The notes under the pieces were generated by a model. It did not search any database. It saw only the letters and a program-made list of their open reading frames with translations, and was not told the origin of the DNA. 64,000 nt of DNA. It comes from Macrostomum lignano. Its lineage: Eukaryota. The position numbers and the translations under genes are program-made. Location of the stretch: assembly GCA_002269645.1 (NCBI GenBank), contig NIVC01001872.1:4823-68822 (forward strand), written 5' to 3'. Within the stretch, counting starts at the first letter, position 1. Each line of letters starts with the position of its first letter. This document shows, in pieces, positions 6,846 through 51,304 of the stretch.

Positions 6846-16865
<10,020 letters not shown>

Positions 16866-21700: not shown

Positions 21701-21960
21701 ACCGCAAGAAAACGCTCCAACCGCTCCTCGTACGCCTCCCAGTTCCGAGGGTTGCTGCAGTTGAATGGTTCGATAACAGGCCTAGTCGCCACTGTTTTTG
21801 TTTTTATGTCGTATTTTGTCGGAGCTAGTCTATTGTAAAAACAAACACGTAGGCTCGAAGCCTAACGGACAAAAATAGTAAAATGAATATTAAAAAGCCC
21901 GCAGCTTTCTGGGTACTTTAGCTCCCGCTAAGTCCGTGTTTAGACCATAAACATAAAAGT
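18800..21960 (-). mobile_element. Ty3/gypsy LTR retrotransposon, internally deleted and frameshifted
   Basis: PBS-like TGGCGAC at the gag start (ends 21792). Gag WEAYEERLERFL, CCHC CYRCSDPDHLRNAC, protease FEVDTGA, RT N-terminus (VRICADFK) with the core deleted, RT thumb (ELRAWIGLVNYY), integrase HHCC (WWPRIDQDIEDSVSNCRGC) and core (SDNGS...PGHPRSNGLAE). No 3' LTR found. Confidence 0.9.
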
Positions 21961-22009
21961 GCATACGTCACACACACATCCAGTCAAATACCATCACAGA
22001 TCCAGTCAG

Positions 22010-22669
22010 ATGCCATCACGCCAAACCCCCACACCGCCACCCCAGGAGGACCCAGTCCAGTTCCGCGACCTTCACCACTTTGGCTGCTACTACAGCCTGG
22101 AGGACATTCTGGCTACAGGCGAGCGGCTCAAGTGCGTCACCGGTGACGCGCTGCCCCGCCTGGCCGGGCTGGAGGTGGGCGGCGGTCACTCGGACGAAGA
22201 CCTGCCGGCCGGAGTGAAGATCGAGCTGCCCTTATTCATGGTGTCGCACGTGTTTGTGCGCCTTCGGCAGGCCTGCTCGCTCCGCGTGGAGCCCCCGCGC
22301 TGCCTGACGGAGGCGCAGAAGAACATCTTCAGCGCTGACCCCACCGTGGTGAACCTGCGCCAGCTGTCGCCTCAGCTCTACCTGCAGGGCATGCACCTGC
22401 TGCTGCTGCCGGGGGCATCAAAACCTGACATCGCCCACACCCTGTGCAAGCTGCTCAGGGGAAGAGTCTGCGCCATCATGGACCGAGCTCTGCACTCGCC
22501 GCTAAATGAGCACTGCTCAATTGTCAACATGCTGGACGACACCGAGATGCTGTTGTTTGGCATCGGCAGGGACACCGCCAGGAAGCTGCAGTGTTGGGAC
22601 TCGGGGCGTCTGCACTCCATCACCGTGTCTGAGACTGTGCTCAGGCACCGAAAGAGGATGGAGCGGTGA
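22010..22669 (+). CDS. GINS3: GINS complex subunit 3 (Psf3), intronless, 219 aa
   Basis: YYSLEDIL, KIELPLFMV, IFSADPTVVNL, IMDRA and LDDTEMLLF...QCWDSG align with Psf3 motifs (FLSLDDIL, KLELPLWLA, VFSADPNVVDL, IMDSS, LDEMERGLF...QCWEKG). First in-frame ATG is at 22010. Confidence 0.93.
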   Translation: MPSRQTPTPPPQEDPVQFRDLHHFGCYYSLEDILATGERLKCVTGDALPRLAGLEVGGGHSDEDLPAGVKIELPLFMVSHVFVRLRQACSLRVEPPRCLTEAQKNIFSADPTVVNLRQLSPQLYLQGMHLLLLPGASKPDIAHTLCKLLRGRVCAIMDRALHSPLNEHCSIVNMLDDTEMLLFGIGRDTARKLQCWDSGRLHSITVSETVLRHRKRMER

Positions 22670-23929: not shown

Positions 23930-26900
23930 ATGGCACAGCCAACGCCATTTCCTGACAAAAAAATAAGTAAAGTTCAAGTGAGGAAACCGAAAGCATAACA
24001 ATATTTGTAAGCTTGATTGCAGTTGCAGGAACTCACTCACATGTTTGAATGTGCAGCTTGGGTGTCTCAATTGCAGTTACAGGAACTCACTCACATATTT
24101 GAATGTGCAGCTTGGGTGCCTCAATTGCAGTTGCAGGAACTCACTCACATGTTTGAATGTGCAGCTTGGGTGCCTCAATTGCAGTTGCAGGAACTCACTC
24201 ACATGTTTGAATGTGCAGCTTGGGTGTCTCAATTGCAGTTGCAGGAACTCACTCACATGTTTGAATGTGCAGCTTGGGTGCCTCGATTGCAGTGGCAGGA
24301 ACTCACTCATATGTTTGAATGTGCAGCTTGGGTGCCTCAATTGCAGTTGCAGGAACTCACTCACATGTTTGAATGTGCAGCTTGGGTGCCTCAATTGCAG
24401 TTGCAGGAACTCACTCACATGTTTGAATGTGCAGCTTGGGTGCCTCAATTGCAGTTGCAGGAACTCACTCACATGTTTGAATGTGCAGCTTGGGTGCCTC
24501 AATTGCAGTTGCAGGAACTCACTCACATGTTTGAATGTGCAGCTTGGGTGCCTCAATTGCAGTGGCAGGAACTCACTCACATGTTTGAATGTGCAGCTTG
24601 GTTGCCTCAATTGCAGTTGCAGGAACTCACTCACATGTTTGAATGTGCAGCTTGGGTGCCTCAATTGCAGTTGCAGGAACTCACTCACATGTTTGAATGT
24701 GCAGCTTGGGTGTCTCAATTGCAGTTGCAGGAACTCACTCACATGTTTGAATGTGCAGCTTGGGTGCCTCGATTGCAGTGGCAGGAACTCACTCATATGT
24801 TTGAATGTGCAGCTTGGGTGCCTCAATTGCAGTTGCAGGAACTCACTCACATGTTTGAATGTGCAGCTTGGGTGCCTCAATTGCAGTTGCAGGAACTCAC
24901 TCACATGTTTGAATGTGCAGCTTGGGTGCCTCAATTGCAGTTGCAGGAACTCACTCACATGTTTGAATGTGCAGCTTGGGTGCCTCAATTGCAGTTGCAG
25001 GAACTCACTCACATGTTTGAATGTGCAGCTTGGGTGCCTCAATTGCAGTGGCAGGAACTCACTCACATGTTTGAATGTGCAGCTTGGTTGCCTCAATTGC
25101 AGTTGCAGGAACTCACTCACATGTTTGAATGTGCAGCTTGGGTGCCTCAATTGCAGTTGCAGGAACTCACTCACATGTTTGAATGTGCAGCTTGGGTGTC
25201 TCAATTGCAGTTGCAGGAACTCACTCACATGTTTGAATGTGCAGCTTGGTTGCCTCAATTGCAGTTGCAGGAACTCACTCACATGTTTGAATGTGCAGCT
25301 TGGGTGCCTCTATTGCAGTTGCAGGAACTCACTCACATGTTTGAATGTGCAGCTTGGTTGCCTCAATTGCAGTTTCAGGAACTCACTCACATGTTTGAAT
25401 GTGCAGCTTGGTTGCCTCAATTGCAGTTTCAGGAACTCACTCACATGTTTGAATGTGCAGCTTGGTTGCCTCAATTGCAGTGGCAGGAACTCACATGTTT
25501 GAATGTGCAGCTTGGGTGCCTCAATTGCAGTTGCAGGAACTCACTCACATGTTTGAATGTGCAGCTTGGGTGCCTCAATTGCAGTTGCAGGAACTCACTC
25601 ACATGTTTGAATGTGCAGCTTGGGTGCCTCAATTGCAGTGGCAGGAACTCACTCACATGTTTGAATGTGCAGCTTGGGTGCCTCAATTGCAGTTGCAGGA
25701 ACTCACTCACATGTTTGAATGTGCAGCTTGGGTGCCTCAATTGCAGTTGCAGGAACTCACTCACATGTTTGAATGTGCAGCTTGGGTGCCTCAATTGCAG
25801 TTGCAGGAACTCACTCAGCCGGACCCCAAAAACCGGGCAAGCGTCGGAGACTCACCAGCCGATCTCCGGAATCTCGCCCACGATGTCATCCGAGGTGACT
25901 TCGGCCAAGTGCGGCGGCTGGCAACGCGCCAACTGGTCACCAGCGCTGATGTAGCTCGTCGAACCGTCCTCATGCTGGTGGCCGACGCTCCTGAGACTCC
26001 CGTGCACACTGAAAAGTGCATCTTGTACTTATTTGAGGTGGGCGCAAACCCCAAGGCGGCTGACGCAAACGGCGACACGGCTGCGCACCTGGCAGCCCGG
26101 CGGGACCACCTGCGGCTGCTGGCGCTGCTGTCGTTCGATGCAAAGTGGCTGCGGAACGACAACGGCGCCACTCCGCTGATGGAGGCGGCGCGGACTGGAA
26201 GCTGGAAATGCGCCAAGCACCTGCTGCACCTGCTCAGGCAGCGAAGGTTCAATGAGTGCGAGAAGCACGGAAACTCGAAGAGGTCGCGGCTGCTCGGACT
26301 GGAGGATCGCGAGGGTCGAACGGCGTCGGACCTGGCGAGGCTCAGCGGCCACTCAGAGCTGGCCAGCTACATCGAGCGGTGAGTGAGCAGATCGCTGCTG
26401 TGTCCATCAAGTTTTGCAGCATTCGGCTGGGGTGGCCAGAGCTGCAGTCTCAGGCCAGCCAATCAGAGCCAGTCAGCTAAGCTTGTCTCTGGCTTAGTGC
26501 ATGTGAAAAATTTAAGAGTGGTGATTAGTCACTCAAAAACTCTCACTTCTAGACACTGGGGACCAAGTATATCCTCGGGTCAAATATCTCTGACGGTAGC
26601 GGCTCCTCGTAGGCTTCGAGGTTTGGCTTCGGTGAATCGCTACTTCCGCGAGTCCTTGACTTTATCTGTGGGTCGACCGAAAGCGAGAGCGAATCAGAAT
26701 TCTTGACGGTGTCCTCGAGCTCGAGGTGCAGTCTCAGGCCAGCCAATCAGAGCCAGTCAGCTGAGCTTGTCTCTGTCTGACTGTTTGATGGGCGAGAGCC
26801 GTGATTGGCTGGCTGCCTCCCAGCCAATGGGGTGACGGTTGATCTCAGTCGAAAATGGAAGCTGTAGGGCCTCGGTGTGTAGTGAGTGTGTGTGGGTTGA

Positions 26901-29900
26901 GCTGCAGATGGAGAACTGGGAGGCTGTGCGTGAGTGCTTTGTGTGACATTGTGAGATGGAAGGAAACTCATGCTGCAGAAATGGAAAATGAGCTGCGTGT
27001 GAGAAGTCGGATGCGCTATCGCCGATGCTGATTGTTGCAGAGCTGCTGCAGTCCTCTTGGAAACTCCATCTGCCAGCAGCACAGATATTTAAGAAATTTC
27101 TTTTTACTAAATTTTTCATGAAAATTAAATCCTACAACTTAAGATTATTATTTAGCGATTGAGGTTGTAGAATTTGAGAAAATGTCAAATTCGCAGCTCA
27201 TTTTTGCTGTTGCAGGGAGATGCGGCTGGTTGTGAATGCACATGGCGAGATCTCCGGCTTGACAGCCCAGGTGAGCGGTGCCGATGCGGCTGCAGCTGAG
27301 CAGCTGTGCTCAAATTTCCCGCTCGCCTTTGCAGGAGGAGCGGGATCGACTGGAACTGCAGCGGCTGGCCAAGTCGGGCGACTCGGCAGGGCTGCGGCGA
27401 GCGGCGACCCGCGGCAATTGCGACCTGCCTTACAGTTTGGGTGTCACCGCGTTGATGTTGGCAGCTGGAAACAGATCGTGCGGTGATGAGGCTCTGTGGG
27501 AGCAGCTGGTGCAGCTGGGTGACCCCACCTGTGCGAATATATGGGGTATCAGTTACCTGCAGTGGGCAGCCAGGGCTGGCAATTCTGCCGCAGCCTCCGC
27601 TCTGCTGTCTGCCGGAGCCTCCGCCAATGCCAGGGGTCTGTGTGAATTCACGCCCCTCATGCATGCAGCCTTTGCGCCCCCCGCCACCGCCGCCGCAGTC
27701 GGTCGGGTTCTGCTGGACTCAGGGGCGGATTGGAGCCTGAAGGACAAATTCAGCAAGACTGCGCTGCGTTTGGCCACAGAGAAGAGGAGCGAACTGGCTG
27801 AGCTGCTGCGTGGGTGAGTTTCCATGGCGACTGAGAATGTCAGTTTATTTAAGATTAATTAGAGCAACTAATTAAAATACATATTACGAGCGACAAAAAT
27901 TTTATAATTAATTGTTTAAGTAAGGATTACGTTAACTTTTAATAGTAAACTATTTTTTATAGAAGACCTAAGTTCTAAAATAATACAGTTTACATGTTTC
28001 AGATTTGAAGGAGACAGCTACTTCCAGGATCCTCTGTGAGTTTGCTACAGCACACACAGCTACAGCACACACAGCTACAGCACACACAGCTACAGCACAC
28101 ACAGCTACAACACACAGCTACAGCACACAGCTACAGCACACAGCTACAGCACACAGCTACAGCACACACAGCTACAGCACACAGCTACAGCACACACAGC
28201 TACAGCACACACAGCTACAGCACACAACTACAGCACACACAGCTACAGCACACACAGCTACAGCACACACAACTACAGCATACACAGCTACAGCATACAC
28301 AGCTACAGCACACACAGCTACAGCACACACAGCTACAGGACACACAGCTACAGCACACAGCTACAGGACACACAGCTACAGCACACAGCTACAGCACACA
28401 GCTACAGCACACAGCTAAAGCACACAGCTACAGCACACAGCTACAGCACACAGCTACAGCACACAGCTACAGCACACAGCTACAGCACACAGCTACAGCA
28501 CACACAGCTACAGCACACAGCTACAGCACATACAGCTACAGCACACAGCTACAGCACATACAGCTACAGCACACACAGCTACAGCACACAGCTACAGCAC
28601 ACAGCTACAGCACACACAGCTACAGCACACAGCTACAGCACACAGCTACAGCACACACAGCTACAGCACACAGCTACAGCACACACAGCTACAGCACACA
28701 GCTACAGCACATACAGCTACAGCACACACAGCTACAGCACACAGCTACAGCACACACAGCTACAGCACACACAGCTACAGCACACAGCTACAGCACACAC
28801 AGCTATAGCACACACAGAGCTACAGCACACAGCTACAGCACACACAGCTACAGCTACTTTCTAAACGTATCGGTTAGTCTCCAGACTCTCGTCCACGACG
28901 TCATCCGAGGTGACTTCGGCAAGGTGCAACGGCTGGCAACGAGCCAGCTGGTCACCAGCGCTGATGCAGCTCGTCGAACCGTCCTCATGCTGGCGGCCGA
29001 CGCTCCTGAGACTCCCGTGCACACTGAAAAGTGCATCTTGTACTTATTTGAGCTGGGCGCGAACCCCAAGGCGGCTGACGCGAACGGCGACACGGCTGCG
29101 CACCTGGCAGCCCGGCGGGACCACCTGCGGCTGCTGACACTGCTGTCGTTCGATGCGAAGTGGCTGCGGAACAAAAACGGCGCCACTCCGCTGATGGAGG
29201 CGGCGCGGACTGGAAGCTGGAAATGCGCCAAGCACCTGCTGCACCTGCTCAGGCAAGCAATGTTCAATGAGTGCAGACAGCACGGAAACTCGAAGAGGTC
29301 GCGGCTGCTCAAAAAGAAAGATCTCGAGGGTCGGACGGCGTCGGACCTGGCGAGGCTCAGCGGCCACTCAGAGCTGGCCAGCTACATCGAGCGGTGAGTG
29401 AGCAGTTCGCTGCTGTGTCCATCAAGTTTTGCAACATTCGGCTGGGGTGGCCAGAGCTGCAGTCTCAGGCCAGCCAATCAGAGCCAGTCAGCTGAGCTTG
29501 TCTCTGTCTGACTGTTTAATGGGCGAGAGCTGTGATTGGCTGGCTGCCTCCCAGCCAATGGGGTGACGGTTGATCTCAGTCGAGAATGGAAGCTGTAGGG
29601 CCTCGGTGTGCAATGAGAGTGTGTGGGTTGAGCTGCAGATGGAGAACTGGGAGGCTGTGCGTGAGTGCTTTGTGAGACATTGTTAGATGGAAGGAAACTC
29701 ATGCTGCAGAAATGGAAAATGAGCTGCGTGTGAGAAGTCGGATGCGCTCTCGCCAATGCTGATTGTTGCAGAGCTGCTGCAGTCCTCTCGGAAACTCCAT
29801 CTGCGAGCAGCTCAGAGAATTAAGAATTTCTGTTCACTAAATTTATCATGCAAACTTTATCGTACAACTGGGAATTTAATTTTAGCGATCGTAGTTGTCG

Positions 29901-32377
29901 GACTCGAGAAAATGTCAAATTCGCAGCTCATTTTTGCTGTTGCAGAGATATGCGGCTGGTTGTGGATGCAGATGGCAAGATCTCCGGCCAGACAGCCCAG
30001 GTGAGCGGCATCTGCGGTGCCGATGCGGCTGCAGCTGAGCAGCTGTGCTCAAATTTCTCGCTTGCCTTTGCAGGAGGAGGCGGATCGACTGGAACTGAGG
30101 CGGCTGGCCAAGGTGGGCGACTCGGCGGGGCTGCGGCGAGCGGCGACCCGCGGCAGCTGCGACCTGACTGACAATGATGGTTGCACCGCGTTGATGTGGG
30201 CTGCTGAGAACAGCTCGTGCGGTGATGAAGCTCTGTGGGAGCAGCTGGTGCAGCTGGGTGACCCCACCTGTGCGGATGTAGATGCTGACAGTTGCCTGCT
30301 CCGGGCAGCCAGGGCTGGCAATTCTGCTGCAGCCTCCGCTCTGCTGGCTGCCGGAGCCTCCGCCAATGCCACGAGTATGTGGGAATTCACGCTTCTCATG
30401 TCGGCAGCCATCTGTGCGCGCCCCTCCGCCGCCGCCGCAGTCGGCCGGGTTCTGCTGGACTCAGGGGCGGATTGGAGCCTGAAGGACAGAGACGGCAGGA
30501 CTGCGCTGGATTTGGCCACACAGAATGGAAAGAGCGAACTGGCTGAGCTGCTGCGTGGGTGAGTTTCCATGGCGACTGAGAATGTCTCTCTGACTTTGAT
30601 TTATCATTGATAAACATTATGCTGTAATTTATGATTGAATATTGAGCAGCTGACTGCAGTTGCTCTGAGTGGGCATTTTTACATTTTTGTAGTTTAAATG
30701 GGCAGCAGGGACTGACTGAGCTGCATTGAGGGAGTTTGCAGTGCAGTTTGACTGCAGATTGCCAGTTGAATATTAATGTGAGCTGTGAGACAATACACTT
30801 GTTTGAGTAAATTTGGGTAAATTTTTTGAAGCTTTTTGTATTCTACATGGCTCTCAACTGAATTCCCTCTGACTTCAGATTCCGCACTTCCTATTTAGGT
30901 ACGACGGCAAGATTTACTTCTACGAGCCTCTGGCACTGCCGTGAGTTCCTACAGCACACAAAATAATTACTCTACTGTTAAAACGACTACAGCAGACAGC
31001 TACAGCATACAGCTACAGCACACAGCTACAGCACACAGCTACAGCACACAGCTACAGTACACAGCTACAGCACACACAGCTACAGCACACACAGCTACAG
31101 CACACACAGCTACAGCATACAGCTACAGCATACAGCTACAGCACACACAGTTACAGCACACACAGCTACAGCACACAGCTACAGCACACAGCTACAGCAC
31201 ACAGCTACAGCACACAGCTACAGCACACAGCTACAGCACACAGCTACAGCACACAGCTACAGCAAACAGCTACAGCACACAGCTACAGCACACAGCTACA
31301 GCACACACAGCTACAGCACACACAGCTACAGCACACAGCTACAGCACACAGCTACAGCATGCAAATTATCCCTGATTGCCTGAATCCGCATCCCCTCAGA
31401 CCCGAAGGTCCCCCGTTCCTGAAGCGCTGGGATGCCCTTCGCCTCATCGGCCGCGGAGGCTTCGGTGAAGTCCACGAAGTTCGAACTGACACGGGCGTCA
31501 CGTGCGCTGCCAAGACTCTCAGACTGCCTGTGCAGCTCGGTGATGAGCTGCCCTCTGTGAGCACAGAGATTCACAGAGCTGTCGAGAGCGAGAACCTGTG
31601 CCGACTGCGGCATCCCAACATCGTCAGGTTCTTGCACATCGCTCAGCCGGAGCCCGCCACAGTCGTTGTGTTCATGGAGCTGCTGGACGGCCGGAGCTTG
31701 GAGAGGTTTATCGACAACCAGCCGCTGGACGAGCTGACGATTCGAGACTTCAGCGAGCAGGTGAGCATTGTGCATCCTTGATGCTCCTGCTCCATGTTCC
31801 CATGAATGATGACTGCTCACTGACCGACCGACCGCAGATCTGCCGCGCGCTGCTCTACCTGCACAGCCGGCAGCCGCCCGTGATCCACAGAGACATCAAC
31901 TGCTCGAACATAATTGTTTGTGCTGACAACACGCGAATCAAGCTGATCGACTTCGGCCTGTCAATCAAGCTGGAGCAGTCAGTCAGCCACATCTCAGCCT
32001 CCCCTCAGTCATTGCCCAAAGGCACTCTGAACTTCATGGCGCCAGAGCTGCTCGGAGCGGGAGAGTCAGACAGCGTGCAGTACAGCAGAGAGTCGGACAT
32101 CTGGGCGTTCGGCTGCTCGGTCTTCCAGATGGCGTCCGGCGCGAGGCCGTTCGCGAACGCCAAAAGCCTGTTAGAAATGGCCCAGCTAATCGACAGGAAG
32201 GGCGCCCCCGCCCTGCCGGACGGCCGGTCCGCAGAGCTGAGGGATTTCTACAGCCGCTGCACCGCCAAGGACCGCAGGAGGAGAAGACCCGCGCAGGAGC
32301 TGCTGGAGCACGAGTTCCTGACGGGCAGGAAGCTGCAGCCTGGATTCTTCAGCTCGTTTTTTAGTACAAGGAAATGA
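23930..32377 (+). CDS. Ankyrin-repeat / MAP3K-like Ser/Thr kinase gene; exons 23930-23977, 25807-26378, 27216-27270, 27335-27813, 28003-28035, 28854-29393, 29946-30000, 30074-30558, 30899-30940, 31358-31760, 31838-32377; about 1083 aa
   Basis: All ten junctions are GT-AG and phase-consistent (sum 3252 nt). Ankyrin motifs GDTAAHLAA, GATPLMEAA, GRTASDLA, TALMWAA, GADWSLKD. Kinase motifs GRGGFGEV, CAAK, HPNIVRF, HRDINCSN, DFG, GTLNFMAPE, SDIWAFGC. Exon 1 is tentative, and the model could in reality be two genes. Confidence 0.75.
24015..25818. repeat. 54-bp minisatellite (about 33 units) duplicating the intron/exon junction of ankyrin exon A
   Basis: Period 54 (24121 vs 24661 = 10 units). The unit contains TTGCAG|GAACTCACTCA, the same as the acceptor at 25806. 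One unit near 25490 has a 4-nt deletion. Confidence 0.95.
28045..28853. repeat. (CACAGCTACAG/CACACAGCTACAG)n array in the intron after the linker exon
   Basis: Mixed 11/13-bp units; homologous arrays at 30985-31357 and 51305-52250. Confidence 0.95.
30985..31357. repeat. (CACAGCTACAG)n array, second copy
   Basis: Same units; ends in the acceptor of the first kinase exon. Confidence 0.95.
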
Positions 32378-33419: not shown

Positions 33420-34600
33420 AGTCCTTCTTGACAATCAACACGCAGCGAGGCCTGTACCAGCTCATTTAAGGCCGCAAGGACGATTGTAGGGCTCCTCGGC
33501 GAAGACAAGGCAATTCCGGAGCACACGACTGCCGAGTCAGTTTGAACAGAAGCCGTCCGTCAACGCCCTGCTGCTGGATGCTGGTGCTGGAGACCGGGTC
33601 CGCAATATCGGCCAGGTCGGTCACGTGTAAGACCTCGCTCGGCGCCCTTCTCGACCAAGGTGCTTTGCTGTCTGCGGACCGGAGCGCTAATGGTTGGCGC
33701 TGACCTGATCGACAGGCAGGTTCAGCTGAGCGTTCGAGCAGGGCTGCGTGCTGTGGGGCGCCTACGGTTCTGCGACAAGGCGTGCTGAAGGAGCTGCACC
33801 AGGCTCGCTGGCCCAGAGCTACGCCTGGTGGCCCGGCCTGGACGAGCAGCTCGCAGCGACAGTCAAGTCGTGCCGGACATGCACGCTGAACCAGACCGAC
33901 CTGCCCAAAGTGCCGAAGCAACCGTGGCCGTTTCCTGCTGAACCCTCGACGAGGCTGCACCTGGACTTCGCAGGCCCCGTGACAGTTGCACATACCAGGT
34001 CATCGTACGTGGAAGCCTTCAGCGAGTGGCCAGAAAAGCAGCAGGTTCGCAGCAATACGTCTGCGGTCATCATCGAGCGACTCTGCGAGGTATTTTCCAT
34101 GAGTCGCAGTCTTCCTCGCTTATCTCCTCGCAGTTCAGCAAGGCGCAACGGCATCCGCTACATTCTCTCACCCCGTTCCACCCGGCAACGAGCGACAGAG
34201 CCGCTCTTTAAGAGCGGGCACTCAACGGCCGCACTGCAGCGGGTGCTGATGCCCTACCGCAACACGCCGCAATCGATCACCGGCGAGGCTCCCCAGATAG
34301 CTCCTCATCGGCCGCAGACTAGCTGCGAAGCTGGCTGGACCTGCTGATGCCATCGCTGACGAGCAGCATGCGGCAGCGGCAAGAGCGGCAGGTGAAGCAG
34401 CAGCTGCATGCGCGCGAGCTCCAAGTCAGCGACCGAGTTCTGCTGCGCCACTTCAGCTTCAACGCCAGGACTGGCGGCGGCACCCGATGGGCGGATGGGA
34501 CTGGCGTGTCCGCTGGCTTCAGCAATTGCGACGTTTTTGTCAGCGCCATGTGCGGCACACTGACCAGCTGCTGACGAGCTCGCTGCCGGAGGCCGGGGTT
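33420..34600 (+). mobile_element. Ty3/gypsy pol relic (RT fragment and integrase)
   Basis: LTINTQRGLYQ, YAWWPGLDEQLAATVKSCRTC, RLHLDFAGP, YRNTPQSITGEAP; frameshifts and deletions. Confidence 0.85.
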
Positions 34601-36082: not shown

Positions 36083-36496
36083 GTACAAATGTACAGTAAT
36101 TCGGCTAGCCTTAGACACCTGTGCGATATGATGCTCATGCAGAGGTGAGACCAGTGTTGCACTTTTCCATCAGTTGTCAAGCAGCTCACTGTGCTCACGC
36201 TGAAGATGCGCCGCCTACTTTGAGCAGTGAGCACTGAGGCCTCAGCTAGGAGCTCAGAAAAAACTTGTGCTCAATTTGCTTCGATATAGCAAAAGTCCTT
36301 CTCAGACTCAGAAACAGTTCGACGGAGTTGCTGCAAATTTTTGGCAGCTAAGTTTTACTGAATATGACATCCAACAAATTCTTTAAACTGCTGTGACTCC
36401 CGTGCATCTCCACATTTTTGCCTTTTTGTCAAGAAATTCAAAAATTCTGATCAGCAGCTCAACTTTTCCTGACTTGCTTTCCAATTTTCCTAACAG

Positions 36497-37429
36497 CCCC
36501 GTTTTCAAGGAGAGCTGGGACTCCGTTCGCTTTGTTGCAAATGGATTTTTTGGTGACATCCAGGAAGTTGTCACAGACAGAGGCATCAGGTGCGCCGCCA
36601 AGACTCTCAACCTGCCTGTGCAGCTCGGCGATAAGAAGGAGACGAAAACGAAGAATATCGATGAAGCTGTCGAGAGCGAGAGAAACCTGTGCCGACTGCG
36701 GCATCCCAACATCGTCAGGTTCTTGCACATCGCTCAGCCGGAGCCCGCCACAGTCGTTGTGTTCATGGAGCTGCTGGACGGCCGAAGCTTGGAGAGGTTT
36801 ATCGACAACCAGCCGCTGGACGAGCTGACGATTCGAGACTTCAGCGAGCAGGTGAGCATTGTGCATCCTTGATGCTCCTGTTCCATGTTCCCATGAATGA
36901 TGACTGCTCACTGACCGACCGCTCGCAGATCTGCCGCGCGCTGCTCTACCTGCACAGCCGGCAGCCGCCCGTGATCCACAGAGACATCAACTGCTCGAAC
37001 ATAATTGTTTGTGCTGACAACACGCGAATCAAGCTGATCGACTTCGGCCTGTCAATCAAGCTGGAGCAGATAGTCAGCCGCCACTCATCTTTCCCGGAGG
37101 CACCCAAAGGCACTCTGAACTTCATGGCGCCAGAGCTGCTCGGAATTGGCACCTCTGAATGCCTTCAGTGCAGCAGAGAGTCGGACATCTGGGCGTTCGG
37201 CTGCTCGGTCTTCCAGATGGCCTCCGGTGCCAAACCGTTCTTAAATGTCAAAAGCTTCTGGGAACTGGCATTGGATCTTTACAGGACCGGTGCCCCCGCC
37301 CTGCCAGACGGCCGGTCCGCAAAACTGAGGGATTTCTACAGCCGCTGCACTGCTAAGGACCGCAGGGAGAGAAGCTCAGCCCAGCAGCTGCTGGAGTTTC
37401 TGGCAAACTGTTCTGACTCGCAGCTCTAA
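36497..37429 (+). CDS. Second MAP3K-like kinase domain; exons 36497-36851 and 36929-37429; upstream exons missing or distant
   Basis: Open frames; ANGFFGDI (altered Gly loop), CAAK, HRDINCSN, DFG, APE. The intron is nearly identical to the kinase 1 intron. Starts at a phase-2 acceptor. Confidence 0.8.
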
Positions 37430-43946: not shown

Positions 43947-45982
43947 TTATTCCCTTAGTTCGATTTTGTTGCTATTAAGAACTTGTTCGATAGCAATGGA
44001 GAAAAAGTTTGCAATCGAGTGATTGGGAGTGAGAAAGTGCTCTAACCCCGAAGTAACGATTCTCCTGTTAATATTTGACCTGTGCTGGTTCATTCTATCT
44101 CTCATTGTTCTTCTAGTCATACCTACATAGAAGATTTTCCCAGGGTGGCACTGGTTACAGGAGATGCCATAGATGATGTTCTTGGAGCCACAGGACAGGC
44201 TCTGAGAGACTAAAACATCGGAAGCCGGTTTCAGCCCCTGGGCGGAGAGAGCAGGCGGTGAGTGGGTGCAGCATTTGCAGCGGGATGACCCACAGGGATG
44301 GAACCCTTTGGGAAGCAAACACAGATTGGTTGTTGGTCCCGCAGTCCAGTTCGTAAGTTTGAGGACCTCCTTTTTGCAGTTTCTAAGAAAAATCTTCAAG
44401 TAGCCTAATTGCTTGAGTTCCGATTTTAAAGAATTGAAAGCATCGTTGAAAGACTTGTAGTCATCACAGATTCGAGCGTACCGAAGGATTTGGGATTTTA
44501 CTACCCCCTTGAAGGTGTGTGACGGATGGAAGGACTGTCGGTGCAGCAATCTATGAGTGTCTGTTTCTTTTGAAAACAGTTGTGTTGTGAAGCGGTTTTC
44601 AGCTTTCTTGATGGTCATGTCAAGAAAACTGACCTCAGTTGATGAGGAGCTGACGGTGAGTTTGATGTTGGGGTTGATTGAATTTAGGTGTCGAACAAAT
44701 TCTGTCAGAGCTTCAGCCGGGTGGTCCCAGTGAATGAAGATATCATCTATGTACCTAAAATAGATGTTGGGCTTATAAAGAGCAGTTTTCAGGGCAGTTT
44801 CCTCCCAGAGGCTCATGAAGAGGCAGGCATAGCTGGGCGCAAATATGCGCCCCATGGCTGTACCTCTAAGTTGTAGGAAAATAACTTTGTCAAATTCAAA
44901 GTCATTCCTGTACAAACACAATTCCAGTAGCTTTATTATTTCAGCATCCGGTCTAATGGGATCCGGGTATCGGTTAAAGAATTCCTGGATCGCTGCAATG
45001 CCCTGATCTATTGGGATCATGGAGTACAGACTCTGGACATCACAAGTTGCCAGAGTCGAACCTTCCTTGCAGCTTTTATCCATAAGGTGTGCCTTGAAGT
45101 CATAGGAGTCCTTAATGAAAGTGGGTTGCGCTTGGGCAATCGGTTTTAGAAAGAAGTCTATGTACTTTTCGGCCCCAATTGCTTCAGAACTGCATCCGCT
45201 AACAATAGGTTTGCCTGCTGGGACCCGAAAGGGGATCAGCCAGGTGGCCGGGTCCTTGTGAATTTTTGGGAGCAGGTAGAAATGCCGGGGACGGAAGTTC
45301 TCTCCGGGACAAAGAAAAGAAAACTGTTTCTTCGATATGAACTTTCTATTACATAAATCGAGGAAGATCCCCCTGATAAGTTCCGCAGTCTCGGGTTGCA
45401 GTGGCTGGTCCAGCTGTTGATAGGCATTAGTGTCAAGCAATTGGTTGTAGGCTGCAAATTCGTAATAATTATGGTGCATGATGACCACTGCGTTACCTTT
45501 GTCCGGCTTTTTATAAGGACGGAGCTGTTTCGCTTGAGCCCCTGAATCGCTTTGGTCTCTGGCACCTCTAGGTTGCCTTTGATCTGTACCGTTGTCAAAT
45601 TCTCTACCAGTTTTTGGTTCTCAAGCACAAACAAGTTGCACTCATCCCTTCTACGTTTTGAGGGAACCTCCTTTACTTATTTCCCCATGAAGGGGGCGGG
45701 CTGCTATTGGCGAGCCCCTCTTTTGAAAAAATCTGTCCAGAAAAGTTTCCGATAAAATTCCGTCATGCAGTTCCTCAGATCATCGAAATCAAGGGCTTGG
45801 GTTGGGATAAAATTAAGTCCCTTATCTAGCAGCCTCGTCTCGGACTCGGAGAGTTGGAAGGTAGGGTGTAGATTCAAAATGTTGCCTTCCAGTTTGGGAG
45901 GCCTACAGTAGTCAGCTAGTTTAAAGTTCTCAGCCAGGAAGCCAGCGCCAGTATATAAAGTCAGGCGCTGAGAAGGATACAA
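43947..45982 (-). CDS. PLE reverse transcriptase / GIY-YIG endonuclease polyprotein, disrupted upstream of 45490
   Basis: LLDKGLNFIPT, KPDKGNAVVIM, FYLLPKIHK, DVQSLYSMI, QLRGTAMG...APSYA, FRYIDDIF, linker CGSSRCKCC, and IIYGISC...FYVGMTRR..RMNQH. The main 513-aa frame is 43947-45488, with a frameshift in an A-run near 45510. Confidence 0.93.
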
Positions 45983-46555: not shown

Positions 46556-47566
46556 TCAGTAGATCGATGGCCTCAGAGAGCGACTCTCGCCAGTGGTCTG
46601 TGCTGAGCAGCTCGTCCGCCAGGACCAGCACCGTTGACTGAGCGCATTGCCGGTTCCGCAGGGCGGCCGACCTTCGTAGTGATGGTAAGGCTGACATTGA
46701 GTACTCATGCACCTCTGTGATTGCCAGCAGTTTGAGGCCCTCGAAAGGCTTTGGGCAGAGGACCAGGTTCCGGAAGTCCCTGCTGATGATGAGCGTACCG
46801 GGCTGCTCAAAGGTGAGTCATTCAGATGCGGCCTGTGGCGTTCCGGACCACCAGGGGAGTCCTCAGAGTCCGGCGATGGTAAGCGACGTTCAGCAGGTGA
46901 AGCAGGCAGTCCCACCCGTGGAAGAGGCGGGGTCACAAAAAGGTCGTCAGCCGCCGACGTACAGCCGTTGTCGGGTGAGGCGACTTCGGTGGTCCCACCG
47001 GCCGCCGGACTGCCTACCGGAGCCCCAACCGCAACCGCTGGCGGGTCGTTGCTTATCGTCGCATCGGCGCTCGCTGCCACGTCCCCAATAGCGCCGTCCG
47101 CTACCGAGTCGGCGTTGGTCTCCGTGCTCGTGCTAGCCGTGGATTCATTGTTTGTTGCTGCGATCGTGCTGGCTGTCGTGGTGTCGTCCTCCACGTTAGA
47201 GCAGACGACCTCTGAGATCCTACGATGTTTGGCAGATTGGGCGCTCTCTTCGAGATCGACTGGTGCCAGGCTTGTAGCCAGAGAGATTACGGTGCTGGGA
47301 ATGGCAGTCTTGGTGGCACTAGGTGCAGATGGGGCCAAGAAAGCCCCGGTGGCACCGCTGTTGGGATCTTCGTGAGTCCAGCGGAAGGTCAAGTTGAACT
47401 GGCGGCCACGTTTGTGGTGTTGCGGGGGAATTCGATGATAAAAATTGGCCTGACAGTCGCTTGACATGGTCAGAAGACTGCCATGAAATAGATCGAGAGA
47501 TAAACAAGGCGCAGTCGCTGACTTAGCTTTTAGATCGAAGGTTCTGGTGCACCTGATTGACAAAGA
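46556..47566 (-). CDS. 5'-truncated AlkB-family (ALKBH2/3-like) 2OG-Fe(II) dioxygenase C-terminal half plus a long Ala/Ser/Thr/Pro-rich tail
   Basis: SLSIRCTRTFDL...LDLFHGSLLTM...FYHRIP...RQFNLTFR parallels ALKBH3 SLSFGATRTFEM...L.HGTLLIM...H.VP...RVNLTFR. The HxD part is absent and homology stops at the (TC)n tract. Confidence 0.78.
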   Translation of the reverse strand, partial: SLSIRCTRTFDLKAKSATAPCLSLDLFHGSLLTMSSDCQANFYHRIPPQHHKRGRQFNLTFRWTHEDPNSGATGAFLAPSAPSATKTAIPSTVISLATSLAPVDLEESAQSAKHRRISEVVCSNVEDDTTTASTIAATNNESTASTSTETNADSVADGAIGDVAASADATISNDPPAVAVGAPVGSPAAGGTTEVASPDNGCTSAADDLFVTPPLPRVGLPASPAERRLPSPDSEDSPGGPERHRPHLNDSPLSSPVRSSSAGTSGTWSSAQSLSRASNCWQSQRCMSTQCQPYHHYEGRPPCGTGNALSQRCWSWRTSCSAQTTGESRSLRPSIY

Positions 47567-48020
47567 GAAAGAGAGAGAGAGAAAGAGAGAGAGAGAGAGG
47601 GGGAGAGAGAGAGGGCACCGGCACCATGATTGGCAAGTTGTTTATTTAGTATTGGTCTAACGCAATTTTATATACAGGGACTCAAGCACTTTTAGTCTGT
47701 ACTCACTTGAGCTCTTATGAATGGTAAAAAATTATTTGCGAAAAATTTACTAAGCTAGACCTTGCAATCTACTGTATATTTAATTTACATTTCTGATTTT
47801 TATCGACCCCGTTTCACGTCTAAATTTATATATATACGGTTAATAAATACAGAAATAAATCGTTGCTAATTTTAAGACCCTGACGATGCCTGACGCGAAC
47901 CGAAACATGTCGCATATCAAAAAACGATAGCGCTCACATTCTTAATTTTACTATTTATCAAACGCGCAATTTTCCGCAATGAAACTTGAGTTCCATTTTC
48001 GTTATTTGTCCTATTAGCAA

Positions 48021-49709
48021 TTGGACATAACGATTCTCGCCCAGCTCGTCATCCGAGGTGACTTCGGACAGGTGCCGCAGCTGGCAACGCGCCAGCTGGT
48101 TACTTGCGCTAATGCAGCTCGTCGGAACGTCCTCATGCGGGTGTTCGGCGCTCCTGAGACTCCCGTGCACACTGAAAAGTGCATCTTGTACTTATTTGAG
48201 CTGGGCGCGAACCCCAAGGCGGCTGACGCGAACGGCGACACGGCTGCGCACCTGGCAGCCCGGCGGGACCACCTGCGGCTGCTGACGCTGCTGTCGTTCG
48301 ATGCGAAGTGGCTGCGGAACAAAAACGGCGCCACTCCGCTGATGGAGGCGGCGCGGACTGGAAGCTGGAAATGCGCTAAGCACCTGCTGCACCTGCTCAG
48401 GCAGATAAGGTTCAATGAGTGCTCTGAGCACGGAAACTCGAAGAGGTCGGAGCTGCTCGGACTGAAGAATCGCGAGAATCGGACAGCGTCGGACCTGGCG
48501 AGGCTCAGCGGCCACTCAGAGCTGACCAGCTACATCGAGCGGTGAGTGAGCAGTTCGCTGCTGTGTCCATCAAGTTTTGCAGCATTCGGCTGGGGTGGCC
48601 AGAGCTGCAGTCTCAGGCCAGCCAATCAGAGCCAGTCAGCTGAGCTTGTCTCTGTCTGACTGCTTGATGGGCGAGAGCTGTGATTGGCTGGCTGCCTCAC
48701 AGCCAATGGGGTGCCGGTCGATCTCAGTCGAGAATGGAAGCTGTAGGGCCTCGGTGTGCAGTGAGAGTGTGTGGGTTGAGCTGCAGATGGAGAACTGGGA
48801 GGCTGTGCGTGAGTGCTTTGTGAGACATTGTGAGATGGAAGGAAACTCATGCTGCAGAAATGGAAAATGAGCTGCGTGTGAGAAGTCGGATGCGCTCTCG
48901 CCAATGCTGATTGTTGCAGTGCTGCTGCAGTCCTCCTGGAAACTCCATCTGCGAGCAGCTCAGATAATTAGGAATTTCTGATTATTTAGTCTATTATTAA
49001 AATTTTATTGTAAAACAAAAACATATATTTTGGCGATCGCATTTGAGTCGGATTTGAGAAAATTGCAAAATTCGCTGCTCATTTTTCCTGTTGCAGGGAG
49101 ATGCGGCTGGTTGTGGATGCACATGGCTGGATCTCCGGTCTTACAGCCCAGGTGAGCGGAATCTGCAGTGCCGATGCGGCTGCAGCTGAGCAGCTGTGCT
49201 CAAATTTCCCGCTCGCCTTTGCAGGAGGAGGCGGATCGACAGAAACTGCAGCGGCTGGCCGAGGCGGGCGACTCGGCAGGGCTGCGGCGAGCGGCGACCC
49301 GCGACAGCTGCGACCTGCCTGACAAATGGGGTCGCACCTCGCTGATGTGGGCAGCTCACAACAGATCGTGTTGTGATGAGGCTCTGTGGAAGCAGCTGGT
49401 GCATCTGGGTGACCCCACCTGTGCAGATAAATATGCTGGCAGTTGTCTGCACCATGCAGCACGGGCTGGCAATTCTGCCGCAGCCTCCGCTCTGCTGAGT
49501 GCCGGAGCCTCCGCCAATGCCACGGGGCTAGGAGACACGTCCCTCATGGAGGCAGCCGAATTTACGCCCCCCACCGCCACCGCCGCCGCAATCGTTCGGC
49601 TTCTGCTGGACGCAGGGGCGGATTGGAGCATTAAGAACAACGACGGCAAGACTCCGCTGGATTTGGCCGTGGAGAACGGAAATATCGAAGCCGCTGAGCT
49701 GCTGCGTAG
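48021..49709 (+). pseudogene. Third ankyrin module: exon A body (about 48021-48541), 49097-49151, 49225-49709
   Basis: Same exon structure and phases as copies 1 and 2. The 5' end is separated by a 5-kb insertion and contains a stop; the 3' side is interrupted by a gypsy fragment. Confidence 0.8.
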
Positions 49710-49989
49710 GTGAGTTTCCATGGCTGTTGTATATTCAATGAGACACAAATATGGTTGATGGATCTGATTCCCTTTTCTAGCCGGCCTCTTCGCTCTTATA
49801 TATTATTTATATCTTCTACACCATTTTACCTTCTATTTTGAACAAACTCTTGTTTAAAAAAACAAGCATATTAGGGCTTGCGGAAATTAAATTCAAAGTC
49901 CCTTTCTATTGAAACAGAAAAAATTCAATTCAGACTGTCTGTGGCCAAAATTGTCTCAGAGTGACGCGCACGCGCAAACTTGAAATTCA

Positions 49990-50460: not shown

Positions 50461-50514
50461 ATGTCCGAGCGTTCGTTGTACGAGTATCCGAATGCATTCA
50501 CTGCACAGTGCAGC

Positions 50515-51290: not shown

Positions 51291-51304
51291 GTGAGTTCCT
51301 TCAG

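What the first reader, a model, noticed from the sequence alone, without database searches (positions are those of the whole stretch)
23930..32377. Cryptic 11-exon gene encoding a four-block ankyrin array fused to a MAP3K-like kinase
What the ORF track shows as scattered fragments splices, with every junction in phase, into one protein of about 1083 aa: A1-B1-linker-A2-B2-linker-kinase. I do not recognise it as an ortholog of known ankyrin kinases (ILK, RIPK4/ANKK1, TNNI3K, DAPK and LRRK have TKL or CAMK kinases N-terminal or central, or different repeats). The kinase motifs (GTLNFMAPE, SDIWAFGCSVFQMASG..PF) look STE11/MEKK-like. A lineage-specific sensor-kinase family is inferred.
Basis: partly seen in the sequence, partly recalled or inferred. 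Interest (0 to 1): 0.8.

Follow-up and report, generated by a model that had tools for sequence, protein, structure and literature searches.

The report
Flatworm ankyrin-kinase gene with duplicated exons
This is one copy of a very large, flatworm-specific family of genes that join a variable ankyrin-repeat binding module to a STE-type protein kinase. The "four-block" protein is a possible but unsupported splice form created by a local duplication of the ankyrin exons.

Summary
The window is Macrostomum lignano contig C1872.

**Observation: confirmed.** Eleven GT-AG exons between 23930 and 32377 join in frame. Pfam finds ankyrin repeats in A1, B1, A2 and B2, and a split protein-kinase domain.

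**Interpretation: partly supported.**
- The gene belongs to a Macrostomum-only family: at least about 100 kinase exon loci and at least 150 A-type ankyrin exons in this assembly.
- No relative above 33% identity was named outside the species.
- The usual architecture is one A block, one B block and one kinase, about 600-700 aa.
- The four-block layout comes from a roughly 3-kb tandem duplication of four exons (A, s, B, e).
- That duplication is shared with a homeologous locus on C414. There the RNA-seq-guided NCBI model (BOX15_Mlig015152g1, 699 aa) joins A1 to B2 and the kinase, skipping B1, E5 and A2.
- No database protein has A-B-A-B-kinase.
- The kinase is STE-group-like, but STE11 and STE20 cannot be told apart. 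Its catalytic-loop lysine is replaced by Asn across the subfamily.
- Variation between paralogs, and between B1 and B2, sits on the canonical ankyrin binding surface. The same ankyrin module is also fused to caspases in paralogs.

A sensor-kinase role is therefore plausible but inferred.

The parts
23930..23977 (+). Exon E1 with the start codon (MAQPTPFPD...). The alternative donor after 23966 is phase 1.
   Evidence: It matches the first exon of P0003 at the homeolog. The donor position orthologous to the homeolog's reads AT in the window. GTAAAG after 23966 and GTGAGG after 23977 both keep the frame with available acceptors. An AG lies 2 nt upstream of the ATG in both homeologs; I infer a possible SL trans-splice acceptor.
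24016..25817 (+). 54-bp minisatellite in intron 1, 33.4 copies. Each unit repeats the A-exon acceptor and its first codons.
   Evidence: Tandem Repeats Finder. The homeolog has only about 7 copies. The array is open in two frames.
25801..26378 (+). Exon A1: ankyrin block A, copy 1. It ends in phase 2 at a GTGAGT donor.
   Evidence: Pfam Ank_2 5.7e-13. The acceptor at 25801 corresponds to the one P0003 uses at the homeolog. P0122 maps at 100% to 25783-26379.
27216..27270 (+). Small exon s1 (REMRLVVNAHGEISGLTAQ), the linker between blocks A and B.
   Evidence: GT-AG sites. P0122 maps exactly to 27217-27270. It forms a short beta hairpin in the AF2 model of P0003.
27335..27813 (+). Exon B1: ankyrin block B, copy 1, with a binding surface different from B2's.
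   Evidence: Pfam Ank_2 1.6e-19. P0122 maps exactly to 27335-27634. B1 and B2 differ at 18 of 24 surface positions against 23 of 137 framework positions, p=3e-8. The RNA-based model at the homeolog skips this exon.
28003..28035 (+). Exon E5 (FEGDSYFQDP..), the unit-1 copy of the small 'e' exon. If its donor is not spliced, the reading frame hits TGA at once.
   Evidence: Good acceptor and a GTGAGT donor. It resembles the 'e' exon of P0023, FEGVIYFDETL. It is 100% identical in the homeolog.
28044..28854 (+). (GCTACAGCACACA)n microsatellite. It fills the intron after E5 and abuts the 5'-truncated A2, marking the duplication joint.
   Evidence: Tandem Repeats Finder. The sequence is shown. Similarity between the two units starts at 25863 / 28878.
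28854..29393 (+). Exon A2: ankyrin block A, copy 2. It lacks the first ~15 codons and the native acceptor of an A exon.
   Evidence: Pfam Ank_2 6.5e-12. A1 and A2 give dN/dS 0.69. The acceptor at 28854 is in phase with E5 but weak; the one at 28885 is phase 0. P0003 skips this exon at the homeolog, while P0006 uses it from an internal Met.
29946..30000 (+). Small exon s2 (RDMRLVVDADGKISGQTAQ).
   Evidence: GT-AG sites. It is the unit-2 copy of s1.
30074..30558 (+). Exon B2: ankyrin block B, copy 2.
   Evidence: Pfam Ank_2 4.6e-18. P0003 uses the orthologous exon.
30899..30940 (+). Exon E9 (YDGKIYFYEPLALP), the linker to the kinase.
   Evidence: GT-AG sites. P0003 uses the orthologous exon, which is 100% identical.
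30987..31359 (+). (CTACAGCACACAG)n microsatellite in the intron before the kinase.
   Evidence: Tandem Repeats Finder.
31400..31760 (+). Exon K1: kinase N-lobe, with G-loop GRGGFGEV and the beta3 lysine in CAAK.
   Evidence: Pfam Pkinase, profile positions 4-107. P0003 at the homeolog supports the 31400 acceptor. Motifs are conserved across 23 paralogs.
31838..32377 (+). Exon K2: kinase C-lobe (HRDINCSN, DFG, GTLNFMAPE, SDIWAFGCS), with the stop codon at 32375-32377.
   Evidence: Pfam Pkinase 1.8e-31, profile positions 106-263. The 77-bp intron 31761-31837 is GT-AG and in phase. Best PDB matches are MAP3K2 and ASK1.

Best explanation
**What it is.** The locus is one gene of a Macrostomum-specific multigene family. 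Its members encode an N-terminal ankyrin domain made of two blocks (A: conserved, with an insertion loop; B: hypervariable) followed by a STE-group-like Ser/Thr kinase.

**How the four blocks arose.** Before this locus and its homeolog on contig C414 diverged, a roughly 3-kb unit of four exons (A, s, B, e) was duplicated in tandem. The joint lies in the microsatellite that follows the 'e' exon. The second A copy lost its first ~15 codons and its native acceptor. The exon phases are symmetrical, so every combination of blocks stays in frame.

**Most likely product.** I think the main product is a protein of about 700 aa with one A and one B block: E1-A1-s-B2-E9-K1-K2, as in the RNA-seq-guided model of the homeolog. 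B1 and A2 would then be skipped or alternative cassette exons. The 1071-1083-aa four-block protein would be at most a minor isoform.

**How it probably works (inferred).** The concave ankyrin surface binds a paralog-specific partner, and the kinase domain transmits the signal. The kinase is otherwise intact, but its catalytic-loop Lys is replaced by Asn. In paralogs the same ankyrin module is wired to a caspase instead, or in addition.
For: **Shown**
- The domains and the in-phase GT-AG exon chain are real.
- Units 1 and 2 are 89-94% identical, introns included.
- The C414 locus (L021) has the same A-s-B-A-s-B-e-K1-K2 layout. It is collinear with the window at about 95% identity by blastn, with a 3.0% intron mismatch rate in the pairwise alignment, and it shares the upstream PSF3 gene.
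- P0003 (PAA83579.1, 699 aa) comes from the StringTie/TACO genome-guided annotation described in PMC5730564. It maps letter for letter to E1, A1, s, B2, e, K1 and K2 of L021, skipping B1, E5 and A2.
- 18 further paralog loci are single-unit or kinase-only. Dozens of annotated proteins are A-B-K.
- Family size: 147 kinase exon matches and at least 150 A-exon matches in the assembly. Both are lower bounds.
- The kinase exons are under purifying selection among paralogs (dN/dS 0.37-0.50) and the catalytic motifs are conserved.
- Variability in block B sits at ankyrin positions 2, 3, 5, 10, 13 and 14. At predefined surface positions pN is 0.374, against 0.111 in the framework.
- B1 and B2 differ at 18 of 24 surface positions against 23 of 137 framework positions, p=3e-8.
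- Paralogs join the same module to a caspase or to a Ras/Roc domain.

**Inferred**
- The binding and sensor role, and which isoform predominates at this particular locus.
Against: - P0003 belongs to the homeolog, not to this locus. No RNA-based model of the window's own gene turned up in the hit lists or clusters I examined.
- In the homeolog, s1 and s2 are identical at the protein level. An A1-s-B2 path could therefore be a short-read or Trinity chimera of two transcripts.
- B1 and A2 are open in both homeologs and show no indels between them. B1 shows a protein-shaped pattern of change. That is not what permanently skipped sequence should look like.
- A transcript-based model at the window's third locus (P0024) does string two B-type exons together.
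- NCBI models with long ankyrin arrays plus kinase exist in more distant paralogs (P0141; P0036, which is UniRef only).
- dN/dS at the surface positions is about 1.0, not above 1, and the permutation test is not significant (19 of 200).
Confidence: 0.55

Rival explanations
1. The main mRNA includes all eleven exons and encodes a protein of about 1071-1083 aa with an A1-B1-A2-B2 ankyrin array in front of the kinase.
For:
- B1 and A2 stay open, without indels between the homeologs.
- B1 differs from B2 mainly at binding-surface positions.
- E5 has good splice sites.
- P0024 shows that duplicated B exons can be co-included in a transcript-based model.
- Long ankyrin arrays plus kinase exist in distant paralogs.
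- The gene prediction P0035 strings pieces of A1, B1, A2 and B2 together.
Against: - The only RNA-guided model of a locus with this layout skips B1, E5 and A2.
- No A-B-A-B-K protein is in the databases.
- A2 lacks its native acceptor. The only in-phase acceptor lies in the microsatellite and has the weakest pyrimidine tract of the gene.
- P0035 is a frameshifted ab initio-style model.
Confidence: 0.15
2. There are two genes. An ankyrin-only gene (E1-A1-s1-B1, with or without E5) ends at a read-through stop. A separate A2-s2-B2-E9-kinase gene starts by trans-splicing or from an internal promoter.
For: - UniProt models split the homeolog in just this way: P0309 ends ...ELLRG at the read-through stop after B1, and P0006 starts at a Met inside A2.
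- P0122 is A1-s1-B1 of this window.
- Ankyrin-only family members that end at the read-through stop after the 'e' exon exist, including the RNA-based P0024 in this window and P0019.
- M. lignano has many polycistronic, trans-spliced transcription units (PMC5730564).
Against: - P0309 is fused to the upstream PSF3 gene and P0006 starts mid-repeat, which is typical of ab initio prediction rather than transcript evidence.
- The RNA-guided model P0003 physically links E1 and A1 to the kinase.
- A2 has no start codon before codon ~35. An out-of-frame ATG at 28962 precedes the in-frame one at 28987 (my reading).
Confidence: 0.15
3. This particular copy is silent or decaying: a redundant homeolog that is no longer properly expressed.
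For: - No RNA-based NCBI protein from this locus appears in the hit lists or in the clusters I examined, although the homeolog and the window's third locus each have one.
- The E1 donor used in the homeolog is mutated from GT to AT here.
- Intron 1 holds a minisatellite expanded to 33 copies, each carrying decoy acceptors.
- dN/dS against the homeolog is 0.46-1.37 per exon.
Against: - All eleven exons are open and have intact GT-AG sites.
- There are no frameshifts in about 3.2 kb of coding sequence, while the introns carry indels.
- Alternative in-frame E1 donors lie 4 and 15 nt downstream.
- Substitution counts are too low to separate dN/dS from either 0.5 or 1.
- The annotation dropped novel transcripts below 0.5 RPKM, and multi-mapping reads between the homeologs would hide expression.
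Confidence: 0.12

Closest known systems
Macrostomum lignano hypothetical protein BOX15_Mlig015152g1 (PAA83579.1; P0003) and its paralogs
   Same: - The exon structure is the same and the locus layout is identical, including the duplicated A/B unit.
- Exons are 92.7-100% identical at the nucleotide level to the homeolog's. A single-unit isoform built from the window is 91.9% identical to P0003.
- The upstream neighbour, PSF3, is shared.
   Different: The window copy has a mutated E1 donor, a roughly 5-fold larger intron-1 minisatellite, and no RNA-based protein model of its own that I could find. The family has no described function.
STE-group kinases: MAP3K2/MEKK2 and MAP3K5/ASK1 (STE11); SLK, MST3, LOK, PAK1, TNIK (STE20)
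   Same: - These are the best sequence and fold matches to the kinase domain: MAP3K2 2e-27 and ASK1 2e-26 with a single sequence; SLK 5.5e-50 and MAP3K2 6.9e-48 with the family profile.
- The motifs GTLNFMAPE and DIWAFGCSVFQMASGARPF resemble ASK1's GTLQYMAPE and DIWSLGCTIIEMATGKPPF.
   Different: - Identity is only about 25-30%, and there is no ortholog outside Macrostomum.
- The catalytic loop reads HRDINCSN in place of HRDIKxxN.
- The N-terminal ankyrin domain is not a feature of MEKK, ASK or STE20 kinases (my knowledge).
Known ankyrin-repeat kinases: ILK, TNNI3K, RIPK4/ANKK1, DAPK1
   Same: Ankyrin repeats and a kinase(-like) domain sit in one polypeptide. In ILK and TNNI3K the repeats are also N-terminal (my knowledge).
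   Different: Their kinase domains are TKL or CAMK (my knowledge). None appears in the top 60 PDB hits. Here Pfam Pkinase scores well above PK_Tyr_Ser-Thr (109.9 against 81.9 bits). The generic ANK-TKL protein P0066 is only 25% identical.
Platyhelminth ANK-caspases, and the M. lignano caspase with a kinase pro-domain (PMC11463336)
   Same: M. lignano paralogs carry the same A-B ankyrin module fused to Peptidase_C14 (P0030, P0031, P0043-46). P0029 is A-B-kinase-caspase. The paper reports such a kinase pro-domain caspase in M. lignano.
   Different: The window gene has no caspase domain. The paper does not describe the ankyrin-kinase family or its size.
RNase L (ankyrin sensor, pseudokinase, KEN nuclease)
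   Same: This is the only full-length architectural analogue among the Foldseek PDB hits: N-terminal ankyrin repeats followed by a kinase fold, aligned over about 685 columns. It works as a ligand-sensing ankyrin domain that controls a kinase-fold dimer (my knowledge).
   Different: TM-score is only about 0.2 and identity 16-18%. There is no KEN nuclease domain and no sequence relationship. It is an analogy, not membership.

Membership tests
Eukaryotic protein kinase superfamily (Pfam PF00069) | Match to the Pkinase profile above the gathering score, across both lobes | tested here: met
   K1 scores 42.4 bits over profile positions 4-107 and K2 109.9 bits over positions 106-263, against a cutoff of 31.7.
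Eukaryotic protein kinase superfamily (Pfam PF00069) | Catalytic residues: G-loop, beta3 Lys, HRD Asp, catalytic-loop Asn, DFG, APE | tested here: met
   GRGGFGEV, CAAK, HRD..SN, IDFG and MAPE are present and conserved in 13-21 of 22-23 paralogs.
Eukaryotic protein kinase superfamily (Pfam PF00069) | Catalytic-loop lysine of Ser/Thr kinases (HRDxKxxN) | tested here: not met
   HRDINCSN in 21 of 22 close paralogs. Distant M. lignano paralogs keep HRDIKCSN or HRDIKSSN. The effect on activity is not known.
STE11 / MAP3K (MEKK, ASK) | The kinase domain groups with STE11 rather than with STE20 or other groups | tested here: inconclusive
   With a single sequence the top PDB hits are MAP3K2 and MAP3K5. 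With the family profile SLK (STE20) comes first, then MAP3K2, then MST3, LOK, WNK1, PAK1 and ASK1, with close scores. I built no phylogeny with curated kinase groups.
STE11 / MAP3K (MEKK, ASK) | Orthologs in other animals | tested here: not met
   Every hit I named at 35% identity or more is M. lignano. The first outsiders are at 33% or less: an oomycete kinase, PAK3-like and RSK-like proteins.
STE11 / MAP3K (MEKK, ASK) | Phosphorylates a MAP2K | not testable with these tools
   This needs a biochemical assay.
Ankyrin repeat domain (PF12796 / PF00023) | Repeated helix-turn-helix units that match the Ank profiles | tested here: met
   Ank_2 E-values run from 5.7e-13 to 1.6e-19 in all four blocks. 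The AF2 model of P0003 gives about 10 helix pairs at pLDDT 84-97. Foldseek's best matches are DARPin fusions and tankyrase ARCs.
Described ankyrin kinases (ILK, TNNI3K, RIPK4/ANKK1, DAPK, LRRK) | TKL- or CAMK-type kinase domain orthologous to those proteins | tested here: not met
   They are absent from the top 60 PDB hits in both searches. Pkinase scores above PK_Tyr_Ser-Thr.
Macrostomum ANK-STE-like kinase family (unnamed; BOX15_Mlig015152g1 type) | Exon chain E1-A-s-B-e-K1-K2 with shared splice phases and high identity | tested here: met
   Exon-by-exon matches at 62-100% protein identity across 20 loci. P0003 maps exactly onto the homeolog.
Platyhelminth ANK-caspases | Peptidase_C14 (caspase) domain after the ankyrin pro-domain | tested here: not met
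   No caspase domain turned up in the Pfam scans of the gene's exons or of the larger window ORFs that I ran. Paralogs have one.
RNase L / Ire1-like | KEN ribonuclease domain after the kinase fold | tested here: not met
   The protein ends about 20 residues after kinase subdomain XI.

The most novel reading that the evidence does not exclude
The family may be a flatworm-specific repertoire of intracellular receptors for immunity or cell death. In this reading:
- A hypervariable ankyrin surface, diversified across more than 100 tandemly clustered loci, recognises different ligands.
- It drives a STE-derived kinase with an altered catalytic loop, or a caspase in sister genes.
- Phase-symmetrical duplication of the ankyrin exons, as in this locus and its homeolog, lets alternative splicing swap or stack recognition blocks (A1/A2, B1/B2). 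One gene could then yield several specificities, including the four-block form.
Probability: 0.2. Interest if true: 0.75.

Novelty: new variant of a known kind. Interest (0 to 1): 0.45.

Why it matters
Ankyrin-kinase fusions are known, but one with a STE-type kinase is not, to my knowledge. This one is expanded to at least a hundred loci in one flatworm lineage. Its variation sits on the ankyrin binding surface, and its ankyrin module is shared with caspases.

I found no paper that describes it. PMC11463336 covers only the ANK-caspases and a single caspase with a kinase pro-domain.

If the family is a receptor repertoire, it would give Macrostomum, a regeneration and stem-cell model with transgenesis, a handle on flatworm innate immunity or regulated cell death. 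The subfamily-wide loss of the catalytic-loop lysine is a clean question for kinase biochemistry.

The specific claim of a four-block protein matters less. It is one possible isoform of a duplicated-exon locus and can be tested with existing RNA-seq data.

Tried and rejected
- **Assembly artefact:** rejected. The two units differ by 6-11%. The same layout occurs on an independent contig whose introns differ from the window's by 3%.
- **Per-exon dN/dS against the homeolog, to ask whether B1 and A2 are coding:** too few substitutions to tell (ratios 0.46-1.37).
- **Positive selection on the ankyrin surface:** dN/dS is 1.0 against 0.53 in the framework, and the permutation test gives 19 of 200. 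Not demonstrated.
- **B1/B2 dN/dS:** 1.79, but Fisher p=0.12.
- **The look-up of encoding contigs for P0024, to walk along the annotated genes of the contig:** nothing on record.
- **P0066, an ANK-kinase from a Logan assembly, as a possible distant ortholog:** rejected. It is a generic ANK-TKL kinase at 25% identity.
- **Literature searches for a description of the family (Macrostomum with ankyrin, kinase, kinome, expansion):** none found.
- **AF2 model:** the ankyrin part is confident, but the kinase part is poor (pLDDT 28-92 in 10-residue blocks). I drew no structural conclusion about the kinase or about domain packing.
- **Joining the second kinase copy (36450-37429) to this gene, as in P0001 (A-B-K-K):** I saw no convincing donor before the K2 stop codon in the window, so I treated it as separate.

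Full report
**Origin of the window.** The window is contig C1872 (positions 4823-68822) of a 764-Mb, 5269-contig assembly. All close protein hits are from the flatworm Macrostomum lignano. The assembly size and scaffold count fit Mlig_3_7 as described in PMC5730564.

**1.

ORFs at 25453-26382, 27275-27817, 28009-29397 and 30005-30562 carry ankyrin repeats. ORFs at 30945-31781 and 31547-32377 carry the two halves of a protein-kinase domain.

Each ORF ends inside a GTGAG(T/C) donor, and each next piece is preceded by an AG. The exon chain is:

| Exon | Coordinates |
|---|---|
| E1 | 23930-23977 |
| A1 | 25801-26378 |
| s1 | 27216-27270 |
| B1 | 27335-27813 |
| E5 | 28003-28035 |
| A2 | 28854-29393 |
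| s2 | 29946-30000 |
| B2 | 30074-30558 |
| E9 | 30899-30940 |
| K1 | 31400-31760 |
| K2 | 31838-32377 |

This chain is open for 1071 aa.

**2. Where the four blocks come from**

Unit 1 (25863-27841) and unit 2 (28878-30586) are tandem copies. They are 94% identical over the A part and 89% over the rest, introns included.

- The unit consists of four exons: A, a 55-nt exon 's', B, and a small exon 'e' (E5 and E9).
- A (GCTACAGCACACA)n microsatellite follows the 'e' exon in both units. In unit 1 it runs up to A2.
- A2 lacks the first ~15 codons and the native acceptor of an A exon.
- The only acceptor in phase with E5 is ctacag|C at 28854, inside the repeat, and it has the weakest pyrimidine tract of the gene. 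The nicer acceptor at 28885 is phase 0.

The tandem duplication is not an assembly error. Contig C414 carries the same A-s-B-A-s-B-e-K1-K2 layout. It is collinear with the window at about 95% identity by blastn, with a 3.0% intron mismatch rate in the pairwise alignment, and it shares the upstream PSF3 gene. The duplication is therefore older than the split between these two homeologs.

**3. What transcripts and annotations say**

The NCBI BOX15 models derive from a genome-guided StringTie/TACO assembly of RNA-seq reads (PMC5730564).

- P0003 (PAA83579.1, BOX15_Mlig015152g1, 699 aa) maps letter for letter onto the C414 locus as E1, A1, s, B2, e, K1, K2. It skips B1, E5 and A2.
- UniProt models from the other annotation split the locus:
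  - P0309 is PSF3 fused to A1-s1-B1, ending at the read-through stop after B1.
  - P0006 is part of A2, then s, B2 and the kinase.
  - P0122 is A1-s1-part of B1 of this very window, at 100% identity.
  - P0035 is a frameshifted model that strings pieces of all four blocks together.
- No protein in the databases has A-B-A-B-kinase.
- No RNA-based model of the window's own gene was found.

The ankyrin-kinase fusion is therefore supported by an RNA-based model, and the four-block array is not. Caveat: s1 and s2 are identical at the protein level in the homeolog, so the A1-s-B2 path could be a short-read artefact.

Three other observations bear on this:
- In the window, the E1 donor that P0003 uses is AT instead of GT. 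Two nearby GT donors keep the frame.
- All single-unit alternatives are open: A1-s-B2-E9-K gives 702 aa and A1-s1-B1-E9-K gives 700 aa.
- At the window's third family locus, the RNA-based model P0024 includes one B exon plus part of a second. It then stops at the read-through stop after the 'e' exon.

**4. B1 and A2 do not look like junk**

- Both are open in both homeologs, with no indels between the homeologs, while several introns carry indels.
- B1 against B2 gives dN/dS 1.79, which is not significant (p=0.12).
- Their differences fall on 18 of 24 predefined ankyrin binding-surface positions (repeat positions 2, 3, 5, 13, 14 and 33, the ones randomised in designed ankyrin proteins; my knowledge). 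Only 23 of 137 framework positions differ, p=3e-8.
- That pattern indicates selection on a protein, or recent conversion from a functional paralog.

**5. The family**

- The genome has 147 exon-level matches to the kinase: about 106 C-lobe exons, roughly a fifth of them with an in-frame stop. It has at least 150 A-type exons, nearly all intact. Both counts are lower bounds, and the loci are clustered on contigs such as C875, C894, C414 and C1803.
- The usual architecture is A-B-kinase, about 600-700 aa.
- Variants are A-B only, A-B-K-K, K-K-K, A-B-caspase, A-B-kinase-caspase and Ras/Roc-A-A-B-kinase.
- Among 16-23 close paralogs, median dN/dS is 0.67 (A), 0.78 (B), 0.50 (K1) and 0.37 (K2).
- Block B variability is concentrated at repeat positions 2, 3, 5, 10, 13 and 14. 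At the predefined surface positions pN is 0.374 against 0.111 in the framework. pS is also higher there, so dN/dS is about 1.0 against 0.53, and a permutation test is not significant.
- An exhaustive HMMER search of 1.84 billion representatives found a graded series of relatives. Every one I could name at 35% identity or more is M. lignano. The first outsiders, at 33% or less, are generic kinases.

**6. The kinase**

- With a single sequence the best PDB hits are MAP3K2 (2e-27) and ASK1, then PAK1, TNIK, MST3 and WNK1.
- With a family profile they are SLK (5.5e-50), MAP3K2, MST3, LOK, WNK1, PAK1 and ASK1.
- The Foldseek hits for the kinase part are TNIK, MAP4K4 and MST3.
- It is STE-group-like. 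Assignment to STE11 or STE20 is unresolved.
- All catalytic motifs are present and conserved, except that the catalytic-loop lysine is Asn (HRDINCSN, 21 of 22 paralogs). More distant M. lignano paralogs keep HRDIKCSN.

**7. Structure**

- AF2 on P0003 gives a confident ankyrin region (residues ~30-390, pLDDT 84-97, about ten helix pairs). Exon 's' forms a short hairpin between A and B. The kinase is poorly modelled.
- Foldseek's best matches are DARPin-DARPin fusions and tankyrase ARCs.
- RNase L is the only full-length analogue (ankyrin plus kinase fold), at a TM-score of about 0.2.

**8. Literature**

PMC11463336 describes platyhelminth ANK-caspases and one M. lignano caspase with a kinase pro-domain. 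I found no description of the ankyrin-kinase family.

**Verdict**

The sequence observation is confirmed.

The four-block protein is an unverified isoform of a locus with duplicated ankyrin exons. The best available RNA-based evidence points to a single-unit protein of about 700 aa. A recognition ('sensor') role for the ankyrin surface is plausible from the pattern of variation and from the caspase-fused paralogs, but it is inferred, not shown.

Noticed in passing
window 24016-25817: A 54-bp minisatellite sits in intron 1, with 33 copies here and about 7 in the homeolog. Each unit repeats the A-exon acceptor (ttgcag) and its first codons (LQELT..) and is open in two frames, so it offers dozens of decoy acceptors.
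   Followed up: partly
window 28044-28854 and 30987-31359: The same (GCTACAGCACACA)n microsatellite fills the intron after the small 'e' exon in both duplicated units. The first copy abuts the truncated A2, so it probably marks, and may have mediated, the tandem duplication.
   Followed up: partly
window 23960-23980: The E1 donor used by the RNA-based model in the homeolog (GAAAGA|GTAAGT) reads AAAAAA|ATAAGT here. In-frame alternative GT donors lie 4 and 15 nt downstream.
   Followed up: yes
window 36450-37429 (+): A second, kinase-only family copy (K1' and K2') lies 4 kb downstream. Its G-loop is degenerate (VANGFFGD), like the second kinase of the A-B-K-K protein P0001. An integrase fragment and a minisatellite lie in between.
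   Followed up: partly
window 48135-51291 (+): A third family locus corresponds to NCBI BOX15_Mlig001598g17 (P0024, 430 aa). Its structure is A-s-B, then part of a second B exon, then 'e', ending at the read-through stop in the unspliced donor. No kinase lies downstream.
   Followed up: yes
window 31838-32377, and paralogs L021-L040: The catalytic-loop lysine is replaced by Asn (HRDINCSN) in 21 of 22 close paralogs, while distant M. lignano paralogs keep HRDIKCSN. The kinase exons are nevertheless under purifying selection.
   Followed up: partly
G000:C1804:79409-85500: Three A-type exons with identical scores are spaced exactly 2793 bp apart, which suggests another tandem array of the ankyrin unit elsewhere in the genome.
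   Followed up: no
window 21944-22669 (+): The upstream neighbour is a GINS subunit PSF3-like gene (PSF3_N domain). The same gene lies upstream of the homeologous locus, and one UniProt model (P0309) wrongly fuses it to the ankyrin exons.
   Followed up: partly
window 10501-11649 (-), 33730-34347 (+), 43947-45620 (-), 46556-47641 (-): Mobile-element fragments are present: a Tc1/mariner-like DDE transposase, an integrase zinc-binding domain and a reverse transcriptase. There is also an AlkB-like 2OG-Fe(II) oxygenase ORF.
   Followed up: no
proteins P0020 and P0029 (M. lignano paralogs): The same ankyrin-kinase module occurs behind a Ras/Roc GTPase domain (P0020) and in front of a caspase domain (P0029). 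This domain shuffling is reminiscent of death-signalling proteins.
   Followed up: partly
paralog exon alignments (A, B, K1, K2 from 16-23 loci): Synonymous divergence among paralogs differs by block (A 0.10, B 0.22, K1 0.11, K2 0.18). This suggests mosaic gene conversion within the family.
   Followed up: no
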